64,000 nt of DNA, from positions 1 to 64,000 of the IMG/VR virus record IMGVR_UViG_3300017917_002466; one strand, given 5' to 3'. Of the stretch, positions 15,581 to 24,001 are shown piece after piece. A program made the translations under genes and the position numbers. Every line of letters starts with the position of its first letter. Position 1 is the stretch's first letter. The notes below the pieces were generated by a model that ran no database searches, had not been told where the DNA came from, and saw only the letters and a list, made by a program, of their open reading frames with translations.

Positions 15581-15664
15581 AACCTCCTGATAGGTTAAAA
15601 AATAAAGTGGTAATCCTTACTTATCAGGTTTCAGGAAAAGGGTGGCCACCCTCTGTCCCACTTT
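15581..15664 (-). ncRNA. Structured leader, HEG-associated motif copy 1 (three-way junction plus RBS hairpin)
   Basis: AAAGTGG-GACAG-AGGGT ggcc ACCCT-TT-TCCT gaaaCCTGATAagta AGGA-TTA-CCACTTT, then AACCT atcagg AGGTT. Confidence 0.7.
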
Positions 15665-15672
15665 TAGTTTTA

Positions 15673-16221
15673 TTATACTAACTCCCAAAAATCAAATTGC
15701 CAGGTTACGTCATACTTAACGGATTCGTTACCACCATAAGCCATAGTAACGTCACCTATGTTCTGGATAAAACAATTGTAGAAGCGAATCTTTTTCTCAA
15801 GTGGTGCACCATTATAAGCATACATAAGTAAGTAAACATCTTTTGCCACATCTCTCTTTTTTGGTCTAAGAGACTGACCACCAGTTGGGTCATTTGGGCT
15901 AATATTATAAATCAAATTCTGCCAGAATGTCAATGCTTTGTGAACAATCTGGTTTTCAGTTTCTTCAATATTAACCGCAAATGTGGAACCAAAAGTTGGT
16001 TTACCAGGAAAGTATTGCTTCATACCAATAAACTCACTAGTAATAGGTTCATTACCGCGAGAAGGTATGACTACTGACCTTGCACGAATAACCAAGTCTT
16101 CTACATCACCCATTATTCCACCCGTTACATCTGCAATGGACGGAATCAAAAGCTCCCACATCCAGTTACGCTGAATGTCAGGTAGTTGTTTTGCTCTGCC
16201 TTCTATTGTAAAATTTGGCAT
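15673..16221 (-). CDS. gp19: Tail tube protein
   Basis: Follows sheath; QRNWMWEL, YFPGKPTFGSTFAVNIEETE, YDVTWQFDFW. Confidence 0.9.
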   Translation of the reverse strand: MPNFTIEGRAKQLPDIQRNWMWELLIPSIADVTGGIMGDVEDLVIRARSVVIPSRGNEPITSEFIGMKQYFPGKPTFGSTFAVNIEETENQIVHKALTFWQNLIYNISPNDPTGGQSLRPKKRDVAKDVYLLMYAYNGAPLEKKIRFYNCFIQNIGDVTMAYGGNESVKYDVTWQFDFWELV

Positions 16222-18179: not shown

Positions 18180-18332
18180 TTATTGGTTGTTCTTAGACTT
18201 TTTTAATCCTTCTTTCTTCGGCTGTATTTCAACGACTTCCGGTCTATTCAATTCTTCAGCCTTTACTACTTTTATCTCAACAGTAGTATTTATAGCTTTA
18301 CTCACTTTACCTGCATTTGGGTTTCTTCCCAT
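18180..18332 (-). CDS. Small hypothetical protein (50 aa)
   Basis: Manual: MGRNPNAGKVSKAINTT...; RBS GAGG; late promoters upstream. Confidence 0.4.
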   Translation of the reverse strand: MGRNPNAGKVSKAINTTVEIKVVKAEELNRPEVVEIQPKKEGLKKSKNNQ

Positions 18333-18361
18333 AATTATTCCTCTGCTTAAAATTCACAAAG

Positions 18362-18389
18362 TATTTATATTTCTTCACTTGTATTTATA
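18362..18389 (-). promoter_or_regulatory. Tandem late promoters TATAAATA (18382-18389, 18362-18369; another at 18287-18294) upstream of sheath
   Basis: Exact consensus copies. Confidence 0.75.
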
Positions 18390-18393
18390 CTTT

Positions 18394-19533
18394 TTACACC
18401 AAATCTTCATCCATAATAGCTGAAGGCTGCCAACTAGGATCACCTAAATCTTCCTGAGCATTAATTGCCTGAACTTCGTCTTCTTCTTTTCCTTCTTCCC
18501 ACTTACCTACTTGTACATTATACTCATCTTCTACATTCTTGGTTTCATAACTTTTTCCATTATAATCTTCTGTAGAAACAAAATATAAAGCCCAAAGTAA
18601 TGCTGTTACACAGTCATCGTGTTCGTGCCTTCCTGCCGCAAAAACATTTGGCTTAATTTCTTCAAATCTACTAAGTTCATAGATTGTTGGTTCGTCACAT
18701 ACTCTAATTCTATCTTTTTCAAGATATTCTTTAAGTAACATATTAGCTTTGAGTTTAGACTTTCTTGTACTTCTAACTCCTAAAGCATTTGGGTCTAAAT
18801 TAATCAAGTCCTCATATTCAAACTCGTGCCAAATTGTATCTGCTACAGTTCCACCAATATCATTGTTTTCAACCATCATATGGGCATTATTATAGAACTT
18901 GGCGACTGATACACATATCTGTGCAAAGTCTCTTGGATTAATCATATTGTTTCTGTAAATTGCTACTTGTTCAATATCATATTCATTTTTAATCCAAAGG
19001 ACTTGAATAACTGAATAATCTTTTCCTATTCCTTTACCAGTATCAACACCAAGCACATATTCTCCGCCGTGAACTGGTTGTCTATAAATTGACAAAAGTC
19101 CATTCCATTTGGTTGCGATTGGGTCTTTAAACTGAATTCTTTCAAGAACGTCCGAATCAATAAGAGTTGATTGACTTCCAAGAAATTTACAATTTTTACT
19201 TATAATATTATTTGTATAATAAGAATTATCAGAAGAATTAACTTGAAGTAATGTATAAACTTTTTCTTTCTTTTTATTCAATTCTATTTTAACTATTTCT
19301 TTTAAACCATTTTTTGTTTCAAGTAAATCGCCTTCAAGAAGATATTTTGATTGTTCTTCATTACCATTTATAATAAAAGTATGGTCAGTAGATACTTCAA
19401 TAATATTCTCATCTTCTAAAGTAAATTTTAAAATTTGAACTTTTTCTAAAACCTCACCGATACCAGCAAAAGTTTTAAAACCTTCAGGTGTTTCAACTTC
19501 AAAGTTTGATATAAATTTAGTTTTGGTTTTCAT
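18394..19533 (-). CDS. gp17: Large terminase C-terminal (nuclease) part fused to split-intein IntC
   Basis: First 114 aa intein-like (STDH block B; VYTLLQV...YYTNNIISKN/C), then CKFLGSQSTLI, YVLGVDTGKG.GKDYS, HDDCVTAL. Confidence 0.92.
   Translation of the reverse strand: MKTKTKFISNFEVETPEGFKTFAGIGEVLEKVQILKFTLEDENIIEVSTDHTFIINGNEEQSKYLLEGDLLETKNGLKEIVKIELNKKKEKVYTLLQVNSSDNSYYTNNIISKNCKFLGSQSTLIDSDVLERIQFKDPIATKWNGLLSIYRQPVHGGEYVLGVDTGKGIGKDYSVIQVLWIKNEYDIEQVAIYRNNMINPRDFAQICVSVAKFYNNAHMMVENNDIGGTVADTIWHEFEYEDLINLDPNALGVRSTRKSKLKANMLLKEYLEKDRIRVCDEPTIYELSRFEEIKPNVFAAGRHEHDDCVTALLWALYFVSTEDYNGKSYETKNVEDEYNVQVGKWEEGKEEDEVQAINAQEDLGDPSWQPSAIMDEDLV
19192..19533 (-). other. Split intein C-fragment (114 aa), ends Lys-Asn, +1 Cys
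   Basis: Hint-domain blocks B, F and G visible in the translation. Confidence 0.85.
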
Positions 19534-20518
19534 TCAATTTTTCCATAAATTGTTTTTCAGTTAAATAGTTTTTAGCCGAATTTATTTTACGAGAACAAAT
19601 ACATAAGTTTTTAAAAGAACCTATTTCTCTCGGATCAATCTTATTTACAAATCCATAATAAACAGAAATTTTATGGTCAATAGTTGGTTGCATAGAATTA
19701 GTATTAAAATGTCTATGATCTATTTTTTCATATTCTAAATTTCCAACTAATTTTTCTCCAGTATAATAATCATATCCATCAAATATTCTATAAACTCTAA
19801 TCCTATGTTTTAAAGTTTCATTTCTAACTAAAGACCAATATTTTTCATATTCAGTTTTAATTTTTCCAATCAACCATTTACCATTTTCTTCGTTACTTTT
19901 TCTTATTTTATCATAAACCCAATCTAATTGAGTATTCCACTCTACACCATATTTTTCTAAACAAGTTTGTTTTCTTTTATTTAAAATTATATTCAATTCT
20001 TCTTCAGTTAAATTTCTCCAAAATTTTTTTCTCTTTTCATTAATTTCTTTTTTATTTTCATTCAAAACTTTCCATCTAGCTTTAATACAAGACTTCATTA
20101 AAAAATTATGACTAACTCCATATTTTTCCTGAATAGTATTACTTTGTTTATTTTTGACATTTTCAACTTCCATAACATTATCGGCACCATATTTTTCTAA
20201 ACAAGTTTGTTTTCTTTTATTTGCTTCTTTTTTAACATCTCTTATTTCAAAAGATTTTTTAATTTTATCTCTAACATATTCTGATTTTTGTTGATGTTTT
20301 AAGCAACAAAATTTAGCATAACCTTTATTGTATCCATAAAATTTAGTTTCTTTTCCACAATATAAACATTTTCCTTCGTCTTCTTTTTTAATATGTTTAT
20401 CATAATATTCTTGTAAACTTATATTATGTTTTATTTTAAGATGATATTGACTAAAACTAATAATAGTTAAATTAGTTTGAATATTACATTCTTTACAAAA
20501 GAATTTTTCTTTTTCCAT
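19517..20518 (-). CDS. Free-standing HNH homing endonuclease with N-terminal Zn finger
   Basis: CKEC...HLKIKH, CLYCGK, KQTCLEKYG repeats, TIDHKISVYYGF...NLCICSRKINSAK. Confidence 0.85.
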   Translation of the reverse strand: MEKEKFFCKECNIQTNLTIISFSQYHLKIKHNISLQEYYDKHIKKEDEGKCLYCGKETKFYGYNKGYAKFCCLKHQQKSEYVRDKIKKSFEIRDVKKEANKRKQTCLEKYGADNVMEVENVKNKQSNTIQEKYGVSHNFLMKSCIKARWKVLNENKKEINEKRKKFWRNLTEEELNIILNKRKQTCLEKYGVEWNTQLDWVYDKIRKSNEENGKWLIGKIKTEYEKYWSLVRNETLKHRIRVYRIFDGYDYYTGEKLVGNLEYEKIDHRHFNTNSMQPTIDHKISVYYGFVNKIDPREIGSFKNLCICSRKINSAKNYLTEKQFMEKLNENQN

Positions 20519-20543
20519 TTTTGACTCCTTTATAAATAAAATT

Positions 20544-20604
20544 TAGAGGGACATATAGGAGATTTGACTCGCCTATCGCAGAACGCCAATTCTGCTTACC
20601 TCTA
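20544..20604 (+). ncRNA. HEG-associated motif copy 4, inverted relative to the HNH gene
   Basis: TAGAGG-GACAT-ATAGG agaTTTGACTCg CCTAT-C-GCAGAA cgccaa TTCTGC-TTA-CCTCTA; TATAAATA at 20531-20538 (+) and 20606-20613 (-). Confidence 0.6.
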
Positions 20605-20706
20605 TTATTTATATTTTTTACTTTTAAAAAATTCCCCAATTTCAATATTTTTTTCTACTTTCATCTTTATATCTCTAATATTTATAATAGTTTGTGAATT
20701 AGCGCA
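20605..20706 (-). other. Split intein N-fragment (33 aa, starts Cys)
   Basis: Block-A-like CANSQTII...IGEF after the extein EFQ. Confidence 0.8.
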
Positions 20707-21510
20707 TTGAAATTCTTGTGCGAATCTGATTGGGTTAGTATCAGCAATGGTTTGCTTTTTCCATTTTTCATCTCTACCAGGAACTTCCCACCAGCCAACA
20801 CTTATAGGAAAGAAGTTATTAGTATTTTCTGTTCTGATAGCCTTAGCCCAAAATTCATAAAAGTGGTTCAAACCCTTTGGGGTTGAAACCATAATAATCT
20901 TGTTGCCTTCATAGCTTGAAATAACTGGATAGGTTGATGTAATGAATTCTTCGGCAACGTGAGAAGGAACCTTGGCAAACTCATCCAAGAAAAGAAGGTT
21001 AACGGTTAAAGAGGTCAAAGCTTCCGCAGAGGTAGCAGATGCTAGTATCCTTGAACCATTCTCAAATTCAACAGACTTTTTATTCCAACCACTTTCTGTT
21101 AATCCTTGTTGTAGCCAAATAGGAAGCATTGTTATAGCTGTTTTAACTCTTTTTAAAATATCTACAGCGGCTTCTTGTTTATGAGCCACGATTGCAACAG
21201 TCTTATCCTTATTGAATAATGCATACCAAAGTAAAAAAATGGTTGAAACAGTAGTCTTTCCACTCTGTCTGGCTATCTTTACGATACAATGTCTCTTGTT
21301 ATTTGGGGTTTCTACGAAGGCTTTTAATACTTTCTTTTGCCATTCATAAAGAACAATCTTTGACTTTCCTTTTTTACCAGTAATAATATAAAAGTAATTC
21401 TCAGCAAAGTAAACAATATCCGTTTTACACTTGATGATTTCATCAATCATCTTTTGAGTATATTCAATCTTTTCACCAACTTTTCTTAAATTAGGATTTC
21501 CAAAAAACAT
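20605..21510 (-). CDS. gp17: Large terminase N-terminal (ATPase) part fused to short split-intein IntN
   Basis: ARQSGKTT Walker A, LLFLDEFA Walker B, VSTPKGLNHFY; ends FAQEFQ/CANSQTIINIRD...IEIGEFF. Confidence 0.93.
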   Translation of the reverse strand: MFFGNPNLRKVGEKIEYTQKMIDEIIKCKTDIVYFAENYFYIITGKKGKSKIVLYEWQKKVLKAFVETPNNKRHCIVKIARQSGKTTVSTIFLLWYALFNKDKTVAIVAHKQEAAVDILKRVKTAITMLPIWLQQGLTESGWNKKSVEFENGSRILASATSAEALTSLTVNLLFLDEFAKVPSHVAEEFITSTYPVISSYEGNKIIMVSTPKGLNHFYEFWAKAIRTENTNNFFPISVGWWEVPGRDEKWKKQTIADTNPIRFAQEFQCANSQTIINIRDIKMKVEKNIEIGEFFKSKKYK

Positions 21511-22046
21511 TATTCAATATCCTTTTCTTTTTTGAACCTGGCCGATGGTAAATGCTCATCTTCAATTGTAAAAGTGGCTTCAATTTTATTCATTTCACTT
21601 GTTGCACTGGCTTTATTTATCATATCAAGAAGCTGTTCCGAACTTAAGGATATTTTATTATTAGCTCCAATATTTTTAATATCAACTGCTCCAACTTGAA
21701 CTTGAGCATCAAAAATATTCTTATTCAATTCAATAAGAGAATTATATTGCTTACCAATAGCTTCTATAAGCTTTGCGTATACTTCTATCTTACGATTGTC
21801 AGTTCCTATCTTAATGTCTTGCTCAACCTTATACATGACTGTTCTCGCAGACATAATAAGGGAACGAAGTTCTGTTCTGATAAAGTCTTGATCTTGTAGT
21901 AATGTGGTAGGAGATTTTACTTTAAGTTCAATCTCAGTCTTTTTATTTTCAATCAAATTCATATCACGATCAACTTCTTTAATTATCTTTTTAAACTCTT
22001 CATCATTGATATTAAACGCACTGGTCAACCCTTCAAACCCTTCCAT
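21510..22046 (-). CDS. gp16: Small terminase subunit (gp16-like)
   Basis: Directly upstream of gp17; DQDFIRTELRSLI...IEVYAKLIEAI helical pattern. Confidence 0.7.
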   Translation of the reverse strand: MEGFEGLTSAFNINDEEFKKIIKEVDRDMNLIENKKTEIELKVKSPTTLLQDQDFIRTELRSLIMSARTVMYKVEQDIKIGTDNRKIEVYAKLIEAIGKQYNSLIELNKNIFDAQVQVGAVDIKNIGANNKISLSSEQLLDMINKASATSEMNKIEATFTIEDEHLPSARFKKEKDIE

Positions 22047-22059
22047 AATAAACTCTCCT

Positions 22060-23001
22060 TTACGTTATATTTGTAGCACTAGTAAAGTATGCAAAATCTT
22101 TTACATCATCTTTAAAATCTCCACTAAAAGTATAAGTTCCAATTGCTGGGACTGCGCTGGATGGTAATTCTCCCGCTGATGTGTATTTAACCCCTGAAGT
22201 TTCAAAATAATCTGCTGAAATAACTAATCCATTAAAGTCTGATGCAGAAGTATATTGTGCTGACATAACAGCAACAGCCTGTGAAGAATCAACAACAAAA
22301 TATTTACTATTAATAACTTTAATGATCTTACTATATTCAAATGGACGATACATCCAAGATTCAACAGTTAAATCTAAAGTTGCATTAATATATCTTCTTT
22401 CATCATCTGAAATTTCTGATGAAACAAATTCAGGAACTACTCCCGGCATCGTAACTTTCAAATCCCTCTCAACATTCAAAAAGGAAAATTCTTTGACTCT
22501 TAAAAACAAAGCTGGATTAAAATAAGGAAGAATGTTTTCCATTATCTGTGAAAAATAATCCATTGAGTCAACCATAATATGAAGAGTATAATTAATATCC
22601 CAAGGGGTTGGTTGATAATCACGAAGAACTTCATCAACATTGGTTCCATCAACTAATGTTTCTGCAAACCATTCTCTCCACTCATTGACTCCGTATGCTC
22701 TATCTGCATTATAAGCTATTCCATTCATCACCAAGGCCATTCTTGGTGTTGAAATCCAGTATCTCTGGCCATAAGGTTCTACTTGTTTATATCCATTAAT
22801 ATCATTAGCGCTTGCAATATACTCGTGATCTTCAATACGTTGCATATGTTCCTTTTCCATTGGACCAAAAGAAATAGGAACATTATATACATCAGCTGAA
22901 GTACCAGATGATGTATACTTATATACTATAATATCATTGAACATATCCATTAAAGCAACAGTCACATTACGAATTGTGCGTGGATAATAAAAAGTTTTCA
23001 T
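22060..23001 (-). CDS. gp15: Tail terminator / sheath stabiliser
   Basis: FYYPRTIRNVTVALMDMFNDI, VPISFGP, PTPWDINYTL, QIMENILPYFNP. Confidence 0.9.
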   Translation of the reverse strand: MKTFYYPRTIRNVTVALMDMFNDIIVYKYTSSGTSADVYNVPISFGPMEKEHMQRIEDHEYIASANDINGYKQVEPYGQRYWISTPRMALVMNGIAYNADRAYGVNEWREWFAETLVDGTNVDEVLRDYQPTPWDINYTLHIMVDSMDYFSQIMENILPYFNPALFLRVKEFSFLNVERDLKVTMPGVVPEFVSSEISDDERRYINATLDLTVESWMYRPFEYSKIIKVINSKYFVVDSSQAVAVMSAQYTSASDFNGLVISADYFETSGVKYTSAGELPSSAVPAIGTYTFSGDFKDDVKDFAYFTSATNIT

Positions 23002-23167
23002 TTAATTTTTTCCAATTTTATTTTTAAATTCTTCTTCTGTCATATAATTTTTTACACTATTAGTACTTCTACTACAAATACATAAATTATTTATGAGTTT
23101 GATTAATATGAGACATTAAACCTTGTAAACTTTTACATTCTTTTCTGCAAATCTTACAAATTTCCAT
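23002..23167 (-). pseudogene. Internally deleted Zn-finger/HNH endonuclease remnant
   Basis: MEICKICRKECKSLQGLMSHINQTH joined out of frame to NNLCICSRSTNSVKNYMTEEEF, matching both ends of 19517..20518. Confidence 0.8.
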
Positions 23168-23251: not shown

Positions 23252-24001
23252 TTATCTTCCCATTCCCGGTATAACCATTGGGTTTGAAGCCTTTTTCTTA
23301 AAATTCATTTTCTTATCCATTAACATTTGAACAAAAGGTTGAAGACCTGCTTCTCCATTATCTGTTGAAATGATTTCTTGTATCATTGACTTGAAATGTT
23401 TCCAATCATCAAAGTTTCCTGATTTACTCTGATCTGCAATCTCAAGTTGCTCTAATGCCTTTTTTAAATAGTCAAGAGCAGCTTTTCCTGCAAATATTTC
23501 ACTTATATTTGAGTCTTGACCAAGAACTGATTCCTTAACAGGTTTTTCTGTTGAAGTTTCTTCTTTGCTTTCATCTTCTGGTTTATCAGTTGTATCAGCC
23601 TGAGCTTCTTCCTTTGTCTTATGAATAACACCGGCCTTATGGTTTGGTGGTGCATAGATAGTATAGACTTTAAGTCCCTTATCGTCTGCAATAACATTAT
23701 GCTTTGAACCGGCGGGAACAACAAAAGCAGAACCGTCTTTAATTTCTGTTTCTTTTCCGTTAATAACTACCTTTCCAGAACCACCATCAACTCTAAAAAA
23801 CTGATCTACCTTTTCGTGTGTTTCTTCCCCAATATCTTCATTTGGATTTAAAGACATTAACACAAGCTGAAGATGTTCTCCAGTAAAAATATCTTTACGA
23901 AAGTTGGTATTATCAGTAGTATCCTTCTCAATATCAACTACAATTCCCTTTGGTTGTTCTTCTGCTGCTTCTGCTTCTTTAACAAAATCTTTGAATGACA
24001 T
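23252..24001 (-). CDS. Cupin-domain protein with capsid-targeting-like N-terminus
   Basis: LQLVLMSL..EDIGEETHEKVDQFFRVDGGSG...VVPAGSKHNV cupin motifs; begins MSFKDFVKE. Confidence 0.8.
   Translation of the reverse strand: MSFKDFVKEAEAAEEQPKGIVVDIEKDTTDNTNFRKDIFTGEHLQLVLMSLNPNEDIGEETHEKVDQFFRVDGGSGKVVINGKETEIKDGSAFVVPAGSKHNVIADDKGLKVYTIYAPPNHKAGVIHKTKEEAQADTTDKPEDESKEETSTEKPVKESVLGQDSNISEIFAGKAALDYLKKALEQLEIADQSKSGNFDDWKHFKSMIQEIISTDNGEAGLQPFVQMLMDKKMNFKKKASNPMVIPGMGR

What the first reader, a model, noticed from the sequence alone, without database searches (positions are those of the whole stretch)
18394..21510. Large terminase fractured by an atypically split intein with an HNH gene between the halves
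Seen: the N-part ends ...FAQEFQ|C + 32 aa (33-aa IntN). The C-part begins with a 114-aa IntC ending ISKN|CKFLGS. Trans-splicing would restore EFQCKFLGS. An HNH gene and the inverted motif lie between the halves. Known: short-IntN/long-IntC inteins (AceL-TerL type) and fractured genes with free-standing endonucleases are described in phage terminases. The penultimate residue is Lys rather than the usual His. Inference: a functional new member, potentially useful for protein trans-splicing.
Basis: partly seen in the sequence, partly recalled or inferred. Interest (0 to 1): 0.72.

Follow-up and report, generated by a model that had tools for sequence, protein, structure and literature searches.

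The report
Split-intein terminase with homing endonuclease
The only large-terminase gene of this 254-kb pond phage is cut in two by a short-N/long-C split intein with an HNH-type homing endonuclease gene between the halves; this arrangement is already described, so the locus is a new member of it with a few unusual details.

Summary
Three minus-strand ORFs encode:
- TerL ATPase domain plus a 33-aa IntN (20605-21510);
- a 333-aa endonuclease (19517-20518);
- a 114-aa IntC plus the TerL nuclease domain (18394-19533).

Intein-less relatives read ..QEFQ-CKFLGS.. straight through, so the junction is exact. IntC and IntN both match the solved "Cat" atypical TerL split intein (PDB 6DSL). Cys1, the block-B His, the terminal Asn and Cys+1 are invariant in 61 relatives. 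dN/dS is 0.14-0.22, and this is the only TerL in a complete genome. Trans-splicing is therefore very likely, but it was not tested.

The penultimate Lys is not decay. It marks a clade of 18 inteins that also carry Thr/Ser where the others have the block-F Asp.

The middle gene has an HNH fold and motif that Pfam HNH models miss; databases list it only as DUF7487.

The "inverted motif" is one hairpin of a conserved, covarying 5' leader of the endonuclease gene.

On the TerL tree intein presence is scattered, which suggests a mobile element.

Verdict: a new member of the known "fractured gene" / AceL-GOS-TerL kind. Interest is moderate.

The parts
20707..21510 (-). TerL N-extein (residues 1-268): ATPase domain with intact Walker A (..ARQSGKT..) and Walker B (..LLFLDE..), ending ..FAQEFQ
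   Evidence: Terminase_6N 2.2e-22; phrog_5989 9e-52; aligned with intein-less TerL relatives
20608..20706 (-). IntN, 33 aa, starts with Cys1 (block A only). The stop codon is 20605-20607
   Evidence: Homologous 28-50-aa tails, all starting with Cys, in 21 related loci. The profile's top hit is CatN, 6dsl_A, E 0.0025. dN/dS 0.22 against L044
20606..20613 (-). T4-type late-promoter motif TATAAATA, overlapping the last IntN codons (Y-K-stop). A second copy lies at 20679-20686 inside the IntN codons
   Evidence: the motif is enriched in the window (21 found against 12.7 expected). Three more copies lie between the TerL-C stop and the tail-sheath gene. Promoter function is inferred
20519..20604 (-). 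Structured 5' leader of the endonuclease gene. Outer stem AGAGG (20599-20603) / CCCTCT (20545-20550). Hairpin 2 is 20555-20576. Then ATTTATA, SD GGAG (20525-20528) and ATG (20516-20518)
   Evidence: Consensus fold with 8 of 16 pairs compensatory. 91% of cells are paired against 37-49% in slid controls, and 0 of 500 shuffles reach the score. The leader is 100% identical to L044 over 89 nt where the locus averages about 85%. The covariance model also finds it in L011, L028 and L044. No Rfam family matches
19517..20518 (-). Free-standing homing endonuclease gene, 333 aa. It has an N-terminal C2H2-type finger (C8, C11, H26, H31), a second Cys finger, DUF7487 helical repeats, and a C-terminal HNH-like nuclease domain (residues about 230-333, nt 19520-19831) with invariant D281, H282, N304 and N313
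   Evidence: DUF7487 1.3e-11; phrog_3339 'homing endonuclease' 1.5e-14; alignment A2. AF2 model pLDDT 85.8; its C-terminal domain best fits HNH nucleases (4h9d Z 6.7, McrA, Cas9 HNH). dN/dS 0.13. A homologue lies between the intein halves in 17 of the 36 related loci
19517..19533 (-). 17-nt overlap between the end of the endonuclease ORF and the start of the IntC ORF
   Evidence: The same feature is described for fractured genes in PMC2677866
19192..19533 (-). IntC, 114 aa, carrying blocks B, F and G: S48..H51 (block B), T94 at the block-F Asp position, K113 penultimate, N114 terminal
   Evidence: 6dsl_B E 6e-8. The profile gives 3.8e-19 and also hits the gp41-1, VidaL and DnaE inteins. AF2 model pLDDT 86, TM 0.75/0.79 to 6dsl_B, and all top hits are inteins. 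H51 and N114 are invariant in 61 sequences. dN/dS 0.14
18394..19191 (-). TerL C-extein (nuclease domain), starting with Cys+1 (CKFLGS..); stop codon included
   Evidence: Terminase_6C 3.5e-14. RB49 and T4 gp17 nuclease domains at 3e-21 and 2e-15, with the alignment starting at the splice junction

Best explanation
This is a 'fractured' large-terminase gene. A class-1 intein, split after its first helix (short IntN, long IntC), interrupts TerL at the boundary between the ATPase and nuclease domains. A free-standing HNH-type homing endonuclease gene sits inside the intein-coding region.

Proposed mechanism:
1. The two TerL halves are translated separately late in infection.
2. The 33-aa IntN docks onto the 114-aa IntC to complete a HINT fold.
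3. Cys1, Cys+1 and the terminal Asn carry out protein trans-splicing, which yields an uninterrupted ..EFQ-CKFLGS.. terminase.
4. The endonuclease is expressed from its own structured leader. It cuts TerL alleles that lack the cassette, so that repair copies IntN, endonuclease gene and IntC in as one unit.

Shown here: the anatomy, homology of both halves to a solved and active intein family, the exact junction, purifying selection, and patchy distribution on the TerL tree.

Inferred: splicing activity, endonuclease activity and its target, and the role of the leader.
For: - The junction is exact against intein-less alleles.
- IntC and IntN match 6dsl_B and 6dsl_A. The IntC model matches 6dsl_B with TM 0.75-0.79, and only inteins follow.
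- Cys1 is invariant in 21 IntN sequences. The block-B His and the terminal Asn are invariant in 61 IntC sequences. Every one of those was collected by a pattern that requires Cys+1.
- dN/dS against the closest relative L044: IntN 0.22, IntC 0.14, endonuclease 0.13, exteins 0.08-0.09, with dS 0.4-1.0.
- The genome is complete (direct terminal repeats, 100% by CheckV). It holds one TerL ATPase domain and one such intein.
- Seventeen of the 36 related loci have a homologous endonuclease between the halves; others have only the leader or a different gene.
- On a tree of 96 C-exteins the split intein needs 27 gains or losses, at least 13 of them forced by supported branches. That is no more clustered than shuffled labels. 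One pair of near-identical exteins differs in intein presence, P0056 against P0101.
- The endonuclease has an HNH fold and an invariant DH..N..N motif.
- The layout matches the published description of fractured genes: hairpin in the 5' leader, late-promoter motif, overlap with the downstream ORF (PMC2677866).
Against: - No experiment and no RNA or protein data exist; the only runs that hold the sequence are DNA metagenomes.
- The complex prediction of IntN with IntC gave no answer (score 0.02).
- Two usual helper residues are replaced: penultimate His by Lys, and block-F Asp by Thr.
- Pfam's intein model is below threshold on this copy (E 0.1).
- No Pfam HNH model hits the endonuclease, and the fold match is middling (Z 6.7).
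Confidence: 0.85

Rival explanations
1. The intein halves no longer splice. They serve only as a non-covalent dimerisation module that holds the ATPase and nuclease halves of TerL together. This is the situation reported for the endonuclease-fractured NrdA of phage Aeh1.
For: - The split lies exactly at the ATPase/nuclease domain boundary: the alignment to the RB49 and T4 nuclease-domain structures starts at the junction.
- The penultimate His and the block-F Asp are both replaced.
- Precedents for non-covalent assembly of fractured phage enzymes exist (PMC3045599, listed; PMC2677866).
Against: - Cys1, the block-B His, the terminal Asn and Cys+1 are invariant across all relatives, including the 18 members of the Lys clade. 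A mere docking module would not need them.
- Inteins without a penultimate His are known to splice; see the references in PMC4031507.
Confidence: 0.08
2. The locus is a decaying, non-functional TerL in a defective or mis-assembled genome.
For: It is a metagenome-assembled genome. A decayed remnant of the same endonuclease family lies 2.5 kb away, at 23005-23165.
Against: - All three ORFs are intact. dN/dS is 0.08-0.22 at dS 0.4-1.0 against an independent contig.
- The same arrangement occurs in dozens of independent contigs.
- The genome is complete and has no second TerL.
Confidence: 0.03
3. The middle gene and its leader form a self-splicing RNA intron, or the whole insert is one contiguous maxi-intein that only looks split because of sequence errors.
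For: A structured RNA lies directly upstream of the endonuclease ORF. Intron plus intein combinations in TerL have been reported for a Campylobacter phage (PMC3322345).
Against: - No group I or group II intron, or any other Rfam family, matches at E up to 1.
- The stop codon after IntN, the 86-nt spacer, the separate SD and ATG, and the out-of-frame overlap with IntC are conserved in many loci.
- The related AceL-TerL and GOS-TerL inteins are reported in the literature as naturally split and active in trans (PMC11766414).
Confidence: 0.03

Closest known systems
AceL-TerL, GOS-TerL and their consensus 'Cat' (PDB 6DSL): naturally split TerL inteins with an atypical (S2) split site
   Same: - The host protein is also a T4-type large terminase.
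- The split is the same kind, short IntN and long IntC: 25/104, 37/115 and 30/104 aa against 33/114 here.
- The nucleophiles are Cys1 and Cys+1, as in AceL-TerL and Cat.
- Sequence and predicted fold are homologous for both halves (lengths from PMC11766414; split-site class from PMC13014065).
- CatN in the crystal starts EFE before residue 1, close to the EFQ here.
   Different: - Only about 30% identical to Cat IntC.
- The penultimate residue is Lys rather than His, and the block-F position is Thr rather than Asp. This pairing is seen in 18 of 61 relatives.
- I could not obtain the native AceL-TerL or GOS-TerL extein sequences, so an identical insertion site is likely but not proven.
'Fractured genes' of Dassa et al. 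2009 (PMC2677866), including the Lake Gatun terminase locus
   Same: N-extein with IntN, a short structured non-coding leader, a free-standing endonuclease gene on the same strand, and an overlap of its 3' end with the IntC ORF. There is a late-promoter motif TATAAATA at the leader. The terminase intein is the one broken at the unusual point.
   Different: - The endonucleases described there are GIY-YIG or Vsr-like; here it is an HNH-like enzyme with zinc fingers and DUF7487 repeats.
- The leader is longer (86 nt against 27-51 nt) and has two covarying hairpins inside an outer stem.
- The ribosome-binding site is not sequestered in the predicted fold.
Split TerL of Campylobacter phages (Fletchervirus CPX, NCTC12673, CP81 and others) and the interrupted TerL of IBB_35
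   Same: The intein belongs to the same family and has the same atypical split. IntN is 30 aa, starting CVAGDTKITVRN... IntC is about 101 aa, ending ..FVSHN followed by C. An HNH endonuclease in TerL was reported for IBB_35 (PMC3322345).
   Different: The insertion is at another TerL site, after the Walker B motif (..LIFIDE). The two halves lie 22 kb apart with no endonuclease between them. The penultimate residue is His and the block-F residue is Asp.
mobE in nrdA of Aeromonas phage Aeh1 (an HNH endonuclease that fractures a gene)
   Same: A free-standing HNH homing endonuclease gene splits an essential phage gene into two ORFs, with a late-promoter motif and RNA structure in its leader (described in PMC2677866).
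   Different: There is no intein there; the NrdA halves assemble without splicing. Its hairpin sequesters the ribosome-binding site, which the leader here does not appear to do.

Membership tests
Atypically split TerL intein (AceL-TerL / GOS-TerL / Cat type) | IntC is a HINT-fold homologue carrying blocks B, F and G | tested here: met
   6dsl_B E 6e-8 for the single sequence and 3.8e-19 for the profile. AF2 model TM 0.75/0.79 to 6dsl_B, and only inteins follow
Atypically split TerL intein (AceL-TerL / GOS-TerL / Cat type) | Short IntN (about 15-37 aa) holding block A only, homologous to CatN | tested here: met
   33 aa. A profile of 21 IntN sequences has 6dsl_A as its top hit, E 0.0025
Atypically split TerL intein (AceL-TerL / GOS-TerL / Cat type) | Class-1 catalytic set: Cys/Ser1, block-B His, terminal Asn, Cys/Ser/Thr+1 | tested here: met
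   C269 of the N-part, and H51, N114 and C115 of the C-part. All are invariant in relatives
Atypically split TerL intein (AceL-TerL / GOS-TerL / Cat type) | Same insertion site in TerL as AceL-TerL and GOS-TerL | tested here: inconclusive
   The site is ..QEF(Q)|C.. at the ATPase/nuclease boundary. CatN in 6dsl_A begins EFE before residue 1. The native AceL and GOS exteins were not available
Atypically split TerL intein (AceL-TerL / GOS-TerL / Cat type) | Usual helper residues (common but not obligatory): penultimate His and block-F Asp | tested here: not met
   K113 and T94. Both positions are called 'assisting' and less conserved in PMC4031507
Atypically split TerL intein (AceL-TerL / GOS-TerL / Cat type) | Protein trans-splicing activity | not testable with these tools
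   The complex prediction gave no answer. Only indirect support exists: it is the sole TerL and it is under purifying selection
Fractured gene arrangement (Dassa et al. 2009) | N-extein with IntN, free-standing endonuclease gene, and IntC with C-extein, all on one strand | tested here: met
Fractured gene arrangement (Dassa et al. 2009) | Hairpin-bearing non-coding leader before the endonuclease ORF, and overlap of its 3' end with the downstream ORF | tested here: met
   86-nt leader with covarying hairpins; 17-nt overlap
Fractured gene arrangement (Dassa et al. 2009) | Endonuclease of the GIY-YIG or Vsr-like type | tested here: not met
   HNH-like fold and motif instead. The closest relative L044 carries a second endonuclease, with an ..EFDGTYWHG.. 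motif that I recognise from memory as Vsr-like, at another TerL site
HNH (His-Me finger) homing endonuclease | beta-beta-alpha-metal fold | tested here: met
   Model residues 230-333 fit the Gme HNH nickase 4h9d (Z 6.7, 78 of 81 residues, rmsd 2.9), McrA, Cas9 HNH domains and Vvn. The Z values are middling but the family is consistent
HNH (His-Me finger) homing endonuclease | Conserved catalytic His with its Asp/Asn partners | tested here: met
   D281, H282, N304 and N313 are invariant in 12 homologues. The motif is present in most of 120 further homologues
HNH (His-Me finger) homing endonuclease | Match to a curated HNH sequence model | tested here: not met
   Pfam gives only DUF7487. A PDB profile search finds only zinc-finger fragments
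HNH (His-Me finger) homing endonuclease | Site-specific cleavage of the cassette-less allele | not testable with these tools
   Inferred from position, from selection (dN/dS 0.13) and from the patchy intein distribution

The most novel reading that the evidence does not exclude
The Lys clade may be a distinct catalytic variant of the TerL split intein. In it, a penultimate Lys together with a block-F Thr/Ser would replace the usual His/Asp pair in promoting branch resolution and Asn cyclisation, possibly with a different pH or rate profile.

Separately, the 86-nt two-hairpin leader, invariant against L044 and covarying in more distant loci, may be a new class of regulatory RNA. It would travel with this endonuclease family and time its expression by a route other than sequestering the ribosome-binding site.
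Probability: 0.3. Interest if true: 0.6.

Novelty: new member of a known kind. Interest (0 to 1): 0.42.

Why it matters
- **Protein engineering.** Short-IntN split inteins are sought-after tools for protein semisynthesis and labelling. Few natural ones have been characterised: AceL-TerL, GOS-TerL, VidaL and PolB16 (PMC13014065). This locus and its 60 or more relatives form a ready panel of natural variants. The panel includes a sub-family with Lys/Thr in place of His/Asp at two helper positions, so a swap experiment would test directly how those positions work.
- **Mobile-element biology.** The data link an unannotated protein family (DUF7487 with a divergent HNH domain, hundreds of members) to homing at a split intein. 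They also show TerL genes broken into two or three pieces in close relatives. In addition, they suggest frequent gain and loss of the cassette.
- **Annotation.** Routine pipelines label the third ORF only as Terminase_6C and miss both the intein and the endonuclease.

Tried and rejected
- **Complex prediction of IntC(1-135) with the N-part tail (255-301).** Score 0.02, 'no answer'. Not used as evidence either way.
- **Single-sequence PDB search with the 41-aa IntN tail.** Only a chance fibrinogen hit. The IntN profile was needed.
- **Pfam on the ORFs.** No intein or HNH model at E up to 1. For IntC alone, Intein_splicing gives only E 0.1.
- **PDB profile search with the endonuclease alignment.** Only zinc-finger fragments.
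- **Rfam scan of 18300-21600 at E up to 1.** Nothing, so no intron or known riboswitch or leader.
- **Nucleotide search against cultured phages.** Only 50-160-nt TerL patches. The phage has no close cultured relative; its tail sheath is 29% identical at best.
- **Lys with Thr/Ser as evidence of functional coupling.** Rejected as a statistical claim. The association is perfect (18 against 43), but the intein tree needs only about 2 changes and gives 2 independent pairs (p 0.5).
- **Leader hairpins sequestering the endonuclease ribosome-binding site, as in Aeh1 mobE.** The predicted fold leaves GGAG free, so I do not claim that mechanism.
- **Papers not held.** Bachmann & Mootz 2015 and Stevens et al. 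2018 could not be read.
Full report
**Observation.** On the minus strand the window holds three consecutive ORFs.
- 20605-21510 (301 aa).
- 19517-20518 (333 aa).
- 18394-19533 (379 aa).

The first matches Terminase_6N (2.2e-22) and the third Terminase_6C (3.5e-14). PHROGs calls both large terminase, and calls the N-terminal half of the middle ORF 'homing endonuclease' (phrog_3339, 1.5e-14). The first ORF ends ..FAQEFQ followed by Cys and 32 more residues. The third begins with 114 residues ending ..ISKN, followed by CKFLGS.

**The junction is exact.** Fifty-eight of the 120 best database relatives of the third ORF are uninterrupted TerL proteins of about 500-590 aa. They read straight through the site; P0012, for example, has ..FSQEFQCKFLGSQSTLIDSDVLERIQFK. 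Alignment to the T4 and RB49 gp17 structures starts at the junction (3c6a E 3e-21; T4 gp17 chain residue about 354). From what I know of gp17, this places the insertion at the boundary between the ATPase and nuclease domains.

**Both halves are intein halves of the known atypical TerL type.**
- IntC alone hits one intein in the PDB, chain B of 6DSL, the 'Cat' consensus atypical split intein (E 6e-8).
- A profile of 40 IntC relatives raises this to 3.8e-19. It also reaches the gp41-1, VidaL, PolB16, DnaE and CDC21 inteins.
- A profile of 21 IntN tails has CatN (6dsl_A) as its top hit (E 0.0025).
- An AlphaFold2 model of IntC (pLDDT 86, pTM 0.76) superposes best on 6dsl_B (TM 0.75/0.79, rmsd 2.8). 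The next 49 hits are all inteins or intein-like HINT domains.
- Pfam's Intein_splicing model is below threshold on this copy (E 0.1). It matches 35 of 40 relatives, the best at 3e-10. This is why public annotation shows only Terminase_6C.
- The complex predictor gave no answer.

**Is it likely to splice?**
- Cys1 is invariant in 21 IntN sequences.
- The block-B His (H51) and the terminal Asn (N114) are invariant in 61 distinct IntC sequences. All of these carry Cys+1, although the collection patterns used required it.
- Against the closest relative, an independent contig (L044), dN/dS is 0.22 for IntN and 0.14 for IntC. It is 0.13 for the endonuclease and 0.08-0.09 for the exteins. dS is 0.4-1.0.
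- The virus record is complete: 253,664 bp, direct terminal repeats, 100% by CheckV. It contains one TerL ATPase domain and one such intein.

An essential gene that exists only in this form, with the splicing residues conserved and the parts under selection, argues strongly for trans-splicing. No direct test was possible. The runs that hold the sequence are DNA metagenomes from a pond and from sediments.

**The penultimate Lys.** Among 61 IntC sequences the residue pairs (block-F Asp position / penultimate position) are:

| Pair | Count |
|---|---|
| D/H | 34 |
| E/H | 7 |
| D/S | 2 |
| T/K | 14 |
| S/K | 3 |
| T/V | 1 |

Lys (or Val) always goes with Thr/Ser, and His (or Ser) always goes with Asp/Glu. 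The window has T94 and K113. On the intein tree this needs only about two changes. On the extein tree all Lys-type inteins sit in one half. It is therefore a clade-level co-substitution, kept over sequences down to about 55% identity. It is not decay in this copy, and it is not statistically testable covariation either. Both positions are 'assisting' rather than obligatory, and inteins without a penultimate His are known to splice (PMC4031507).

**The middle gene.** Pfam sees only DUF7487. An alignment of 12 homologues shows four parts:
- a C2H2-type finger (C8, C11, H26, H31);
- a second Cys finger;
- helical DUF7487 repeats, including the exact 38-nt direct repeat found;
- a C-terminal block with invariant P278-T-x-D281-H282-K, N304-L and N313..K316.

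The AF2 model (pLDDT 85.8) places residues 230-333 in a fold whose best matches are all His-Me finger nucleases. These include the Gme HNH nickase (Z 6.7 over 78 of 81 residues), McrA, many Cas9 HNH domains and Vvn. The Z values are middling, but the family is consistent and the motif fits. I accept 'HNH-type' with moderate-to-good confidence. The family has at least 686 members in the large protein collection, all unnamed or labelled DUF7487, and most carry the motif. Cultured phages share only the DNA-binding half, for example the LIMEstone F-LimVIII endonucleases.

**The 'inverted motif'.** GCAGAA-N6-TTCTGC (20578-20595) occurs once in the window. It is hairpin 1 of an 86-nt leader between the IntN stop and the endonuclease ATG. 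An outer stem (AGAGG / CCCTCT) encloses hairpin 1 and hairpin 2. An ATTTATA box and the GGAG ribosome-binding site follow.
- Across eight loci, 8 of the 16 pairs show compensatory changes.
- 91% of cells are paired against 37-49% when partners are slid, and no shuffle out of 500 reaches the covariation score. The outer stem never varies, so covariation says nothing about it.
- Against L044 the leader is 100% identical over 89 nt, while the surrounding locus averages about 85%.
- A covariance model finds it again in L011, where the endonuclease gene is gone, and in L028.
- No Rfam family matches.
- A T4-type late-promoter motif, TATAAATA, overlaps the last IntN codons (20606-20613). Another lies at 20679-20686. 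The motif is enriched in the window, and three more copies lie between the TerL-C stop and the tail-sheath gene.

This matches the hairpins and late-promoter motifs that Dassa et al. described upstream of endonucleases in fractured genes (PMC2677866). The leader here is longer, however, and the predicted fold leaves the ribosome-binding site free. Its mechanism is therefore open. My guess is timing or attenuation of endonuclease expression.

**Relatives and mobility.** A scan of IMG/VR gave 36 loci with this IntC.
- Seventeen of them have a homologue of this endonuclease (35-69% identity) between the halves.
- Four have only a 120-290-nt gap.
- Others have a different insert.

On a tree of 96 C-exteins, presence of the split intein needs 27 changes, at least 13 of them forced by supported branches. 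That is no better than shuffled labels (74 of 500 as low). P0056 (split) and P0101 (unsplit) have almost identical exteins. The closest intein-less allele (P0009, 81% identical over the aligned C-extein) is about as close to the window as the closest intein-bearing ones. The cassette is therefore gained and lost often, as expected for a homing element. The direction of these changes was not resolved.

**Comparison with what is known.** Dassa et al. 2009 described exactly this arrangement, including one terminase locus broken at the unusual point. GOS-TerL (37/115 aa, Ser1), AceL-TerL (25/104) and Cat (30/104) are its characterised members (PMC2677866; PMC11766414; PMC13014065). The present locus is a further member. 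It differs in four ways:
- the endonuclease type (HNH-like, not GIY-YIG or Vsr-like);
- the Lys/Thr pair;
- the more elaborate leader;
- its position in a complete 254-kb genome of a deep-branching T4-like pond phage.

**Verdict.** The locus is a new member of a known kind. It has moderate interest as a natural variant for intein engineering and as an entry point to an unannotated endonuclease family.

Noticed in passing
window 23005-23165 (-): A decayed copy of the same endonuclease family lies between ORF 23252-24001 and ORF 22060-23001 (313 aa, function not checked). It consists of a 26-aa ORF with the C2H2 finger (MEICKICRKEC..HINQTHK), followed directly by a frame encoding the last 30 residues (..LCICSRSTNS.KN.., 57% identical). 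The middle has been deleted. A TAGAGG plus GC-hairpin sequence lies upstream.
   Followed up: partly
L044:1291-6143 (closest relative, Logan contig): Here TerL is in three pieces. A second atypically split intein sits in the P-loop: ..ARQSGK|C plus a 32-aa IntN, and an IntC ending ..ILSHN|TTIST. A 393-aa zinc-finger endonuclease with an ..EFDGTYWHG.. motif lies between those halves; from memory this looks Vsr-like. The window's site and endonuclease (83% identical) are also present. The window's P-loop is uninterrupted.
   Followed up: partly
L001, L007, L012, L016, L018, L019, L032 (N-extein residues about 68-86); L002-L004, L029 (C-extein residue about 194): Many TerL genes of this group carry further intein-like or roughly 1-kb insertions at other sites. 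TerL is a hotspot for several mobile elements at once.
   Followed up: no
L039:3498-4826 and L040:1411-2127 (Campylobacter phage CPX, NC_016562): Cultured Campylobacter phages have the same intein family with the same atypical split (30-aa IntN). It is inserted after Walker B (..LIFIDE|C), and the two TerL halves lie 22 kb apart with no endonuclease between them. The C-half is annotated simply as terminase.
   Followed up: partly
window 15595-15692 (+): A weak hit of the leader covariance model (E about 0.002, rough) on the strand opposite to the flanking genes, just downstream of ORF 15673-16221 (-). It shares the ..CTGTCCCAC.. box and a GC hairpin (GGGTGGCCACCC). It may be a related structured element or a terminator.
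   Followed up: no
window 18287-18389 (-) and elsewhere: TATAAATA, the T4 late-promoter motif, is enriched (21 found against 12.7 expected). It occurs three times between the TerL-C stop and the tail-sheath gene, consistent with T4-type late transcription in this distant relative.
   Followed up: no
P0056 versus P0101 (database proteins): Two TerL C-exteins that are almost identical (branch lengths 0.006 and 0.016), one with the split intein and one without. This points to a very recent gain or precise loss.
   Followed up: no
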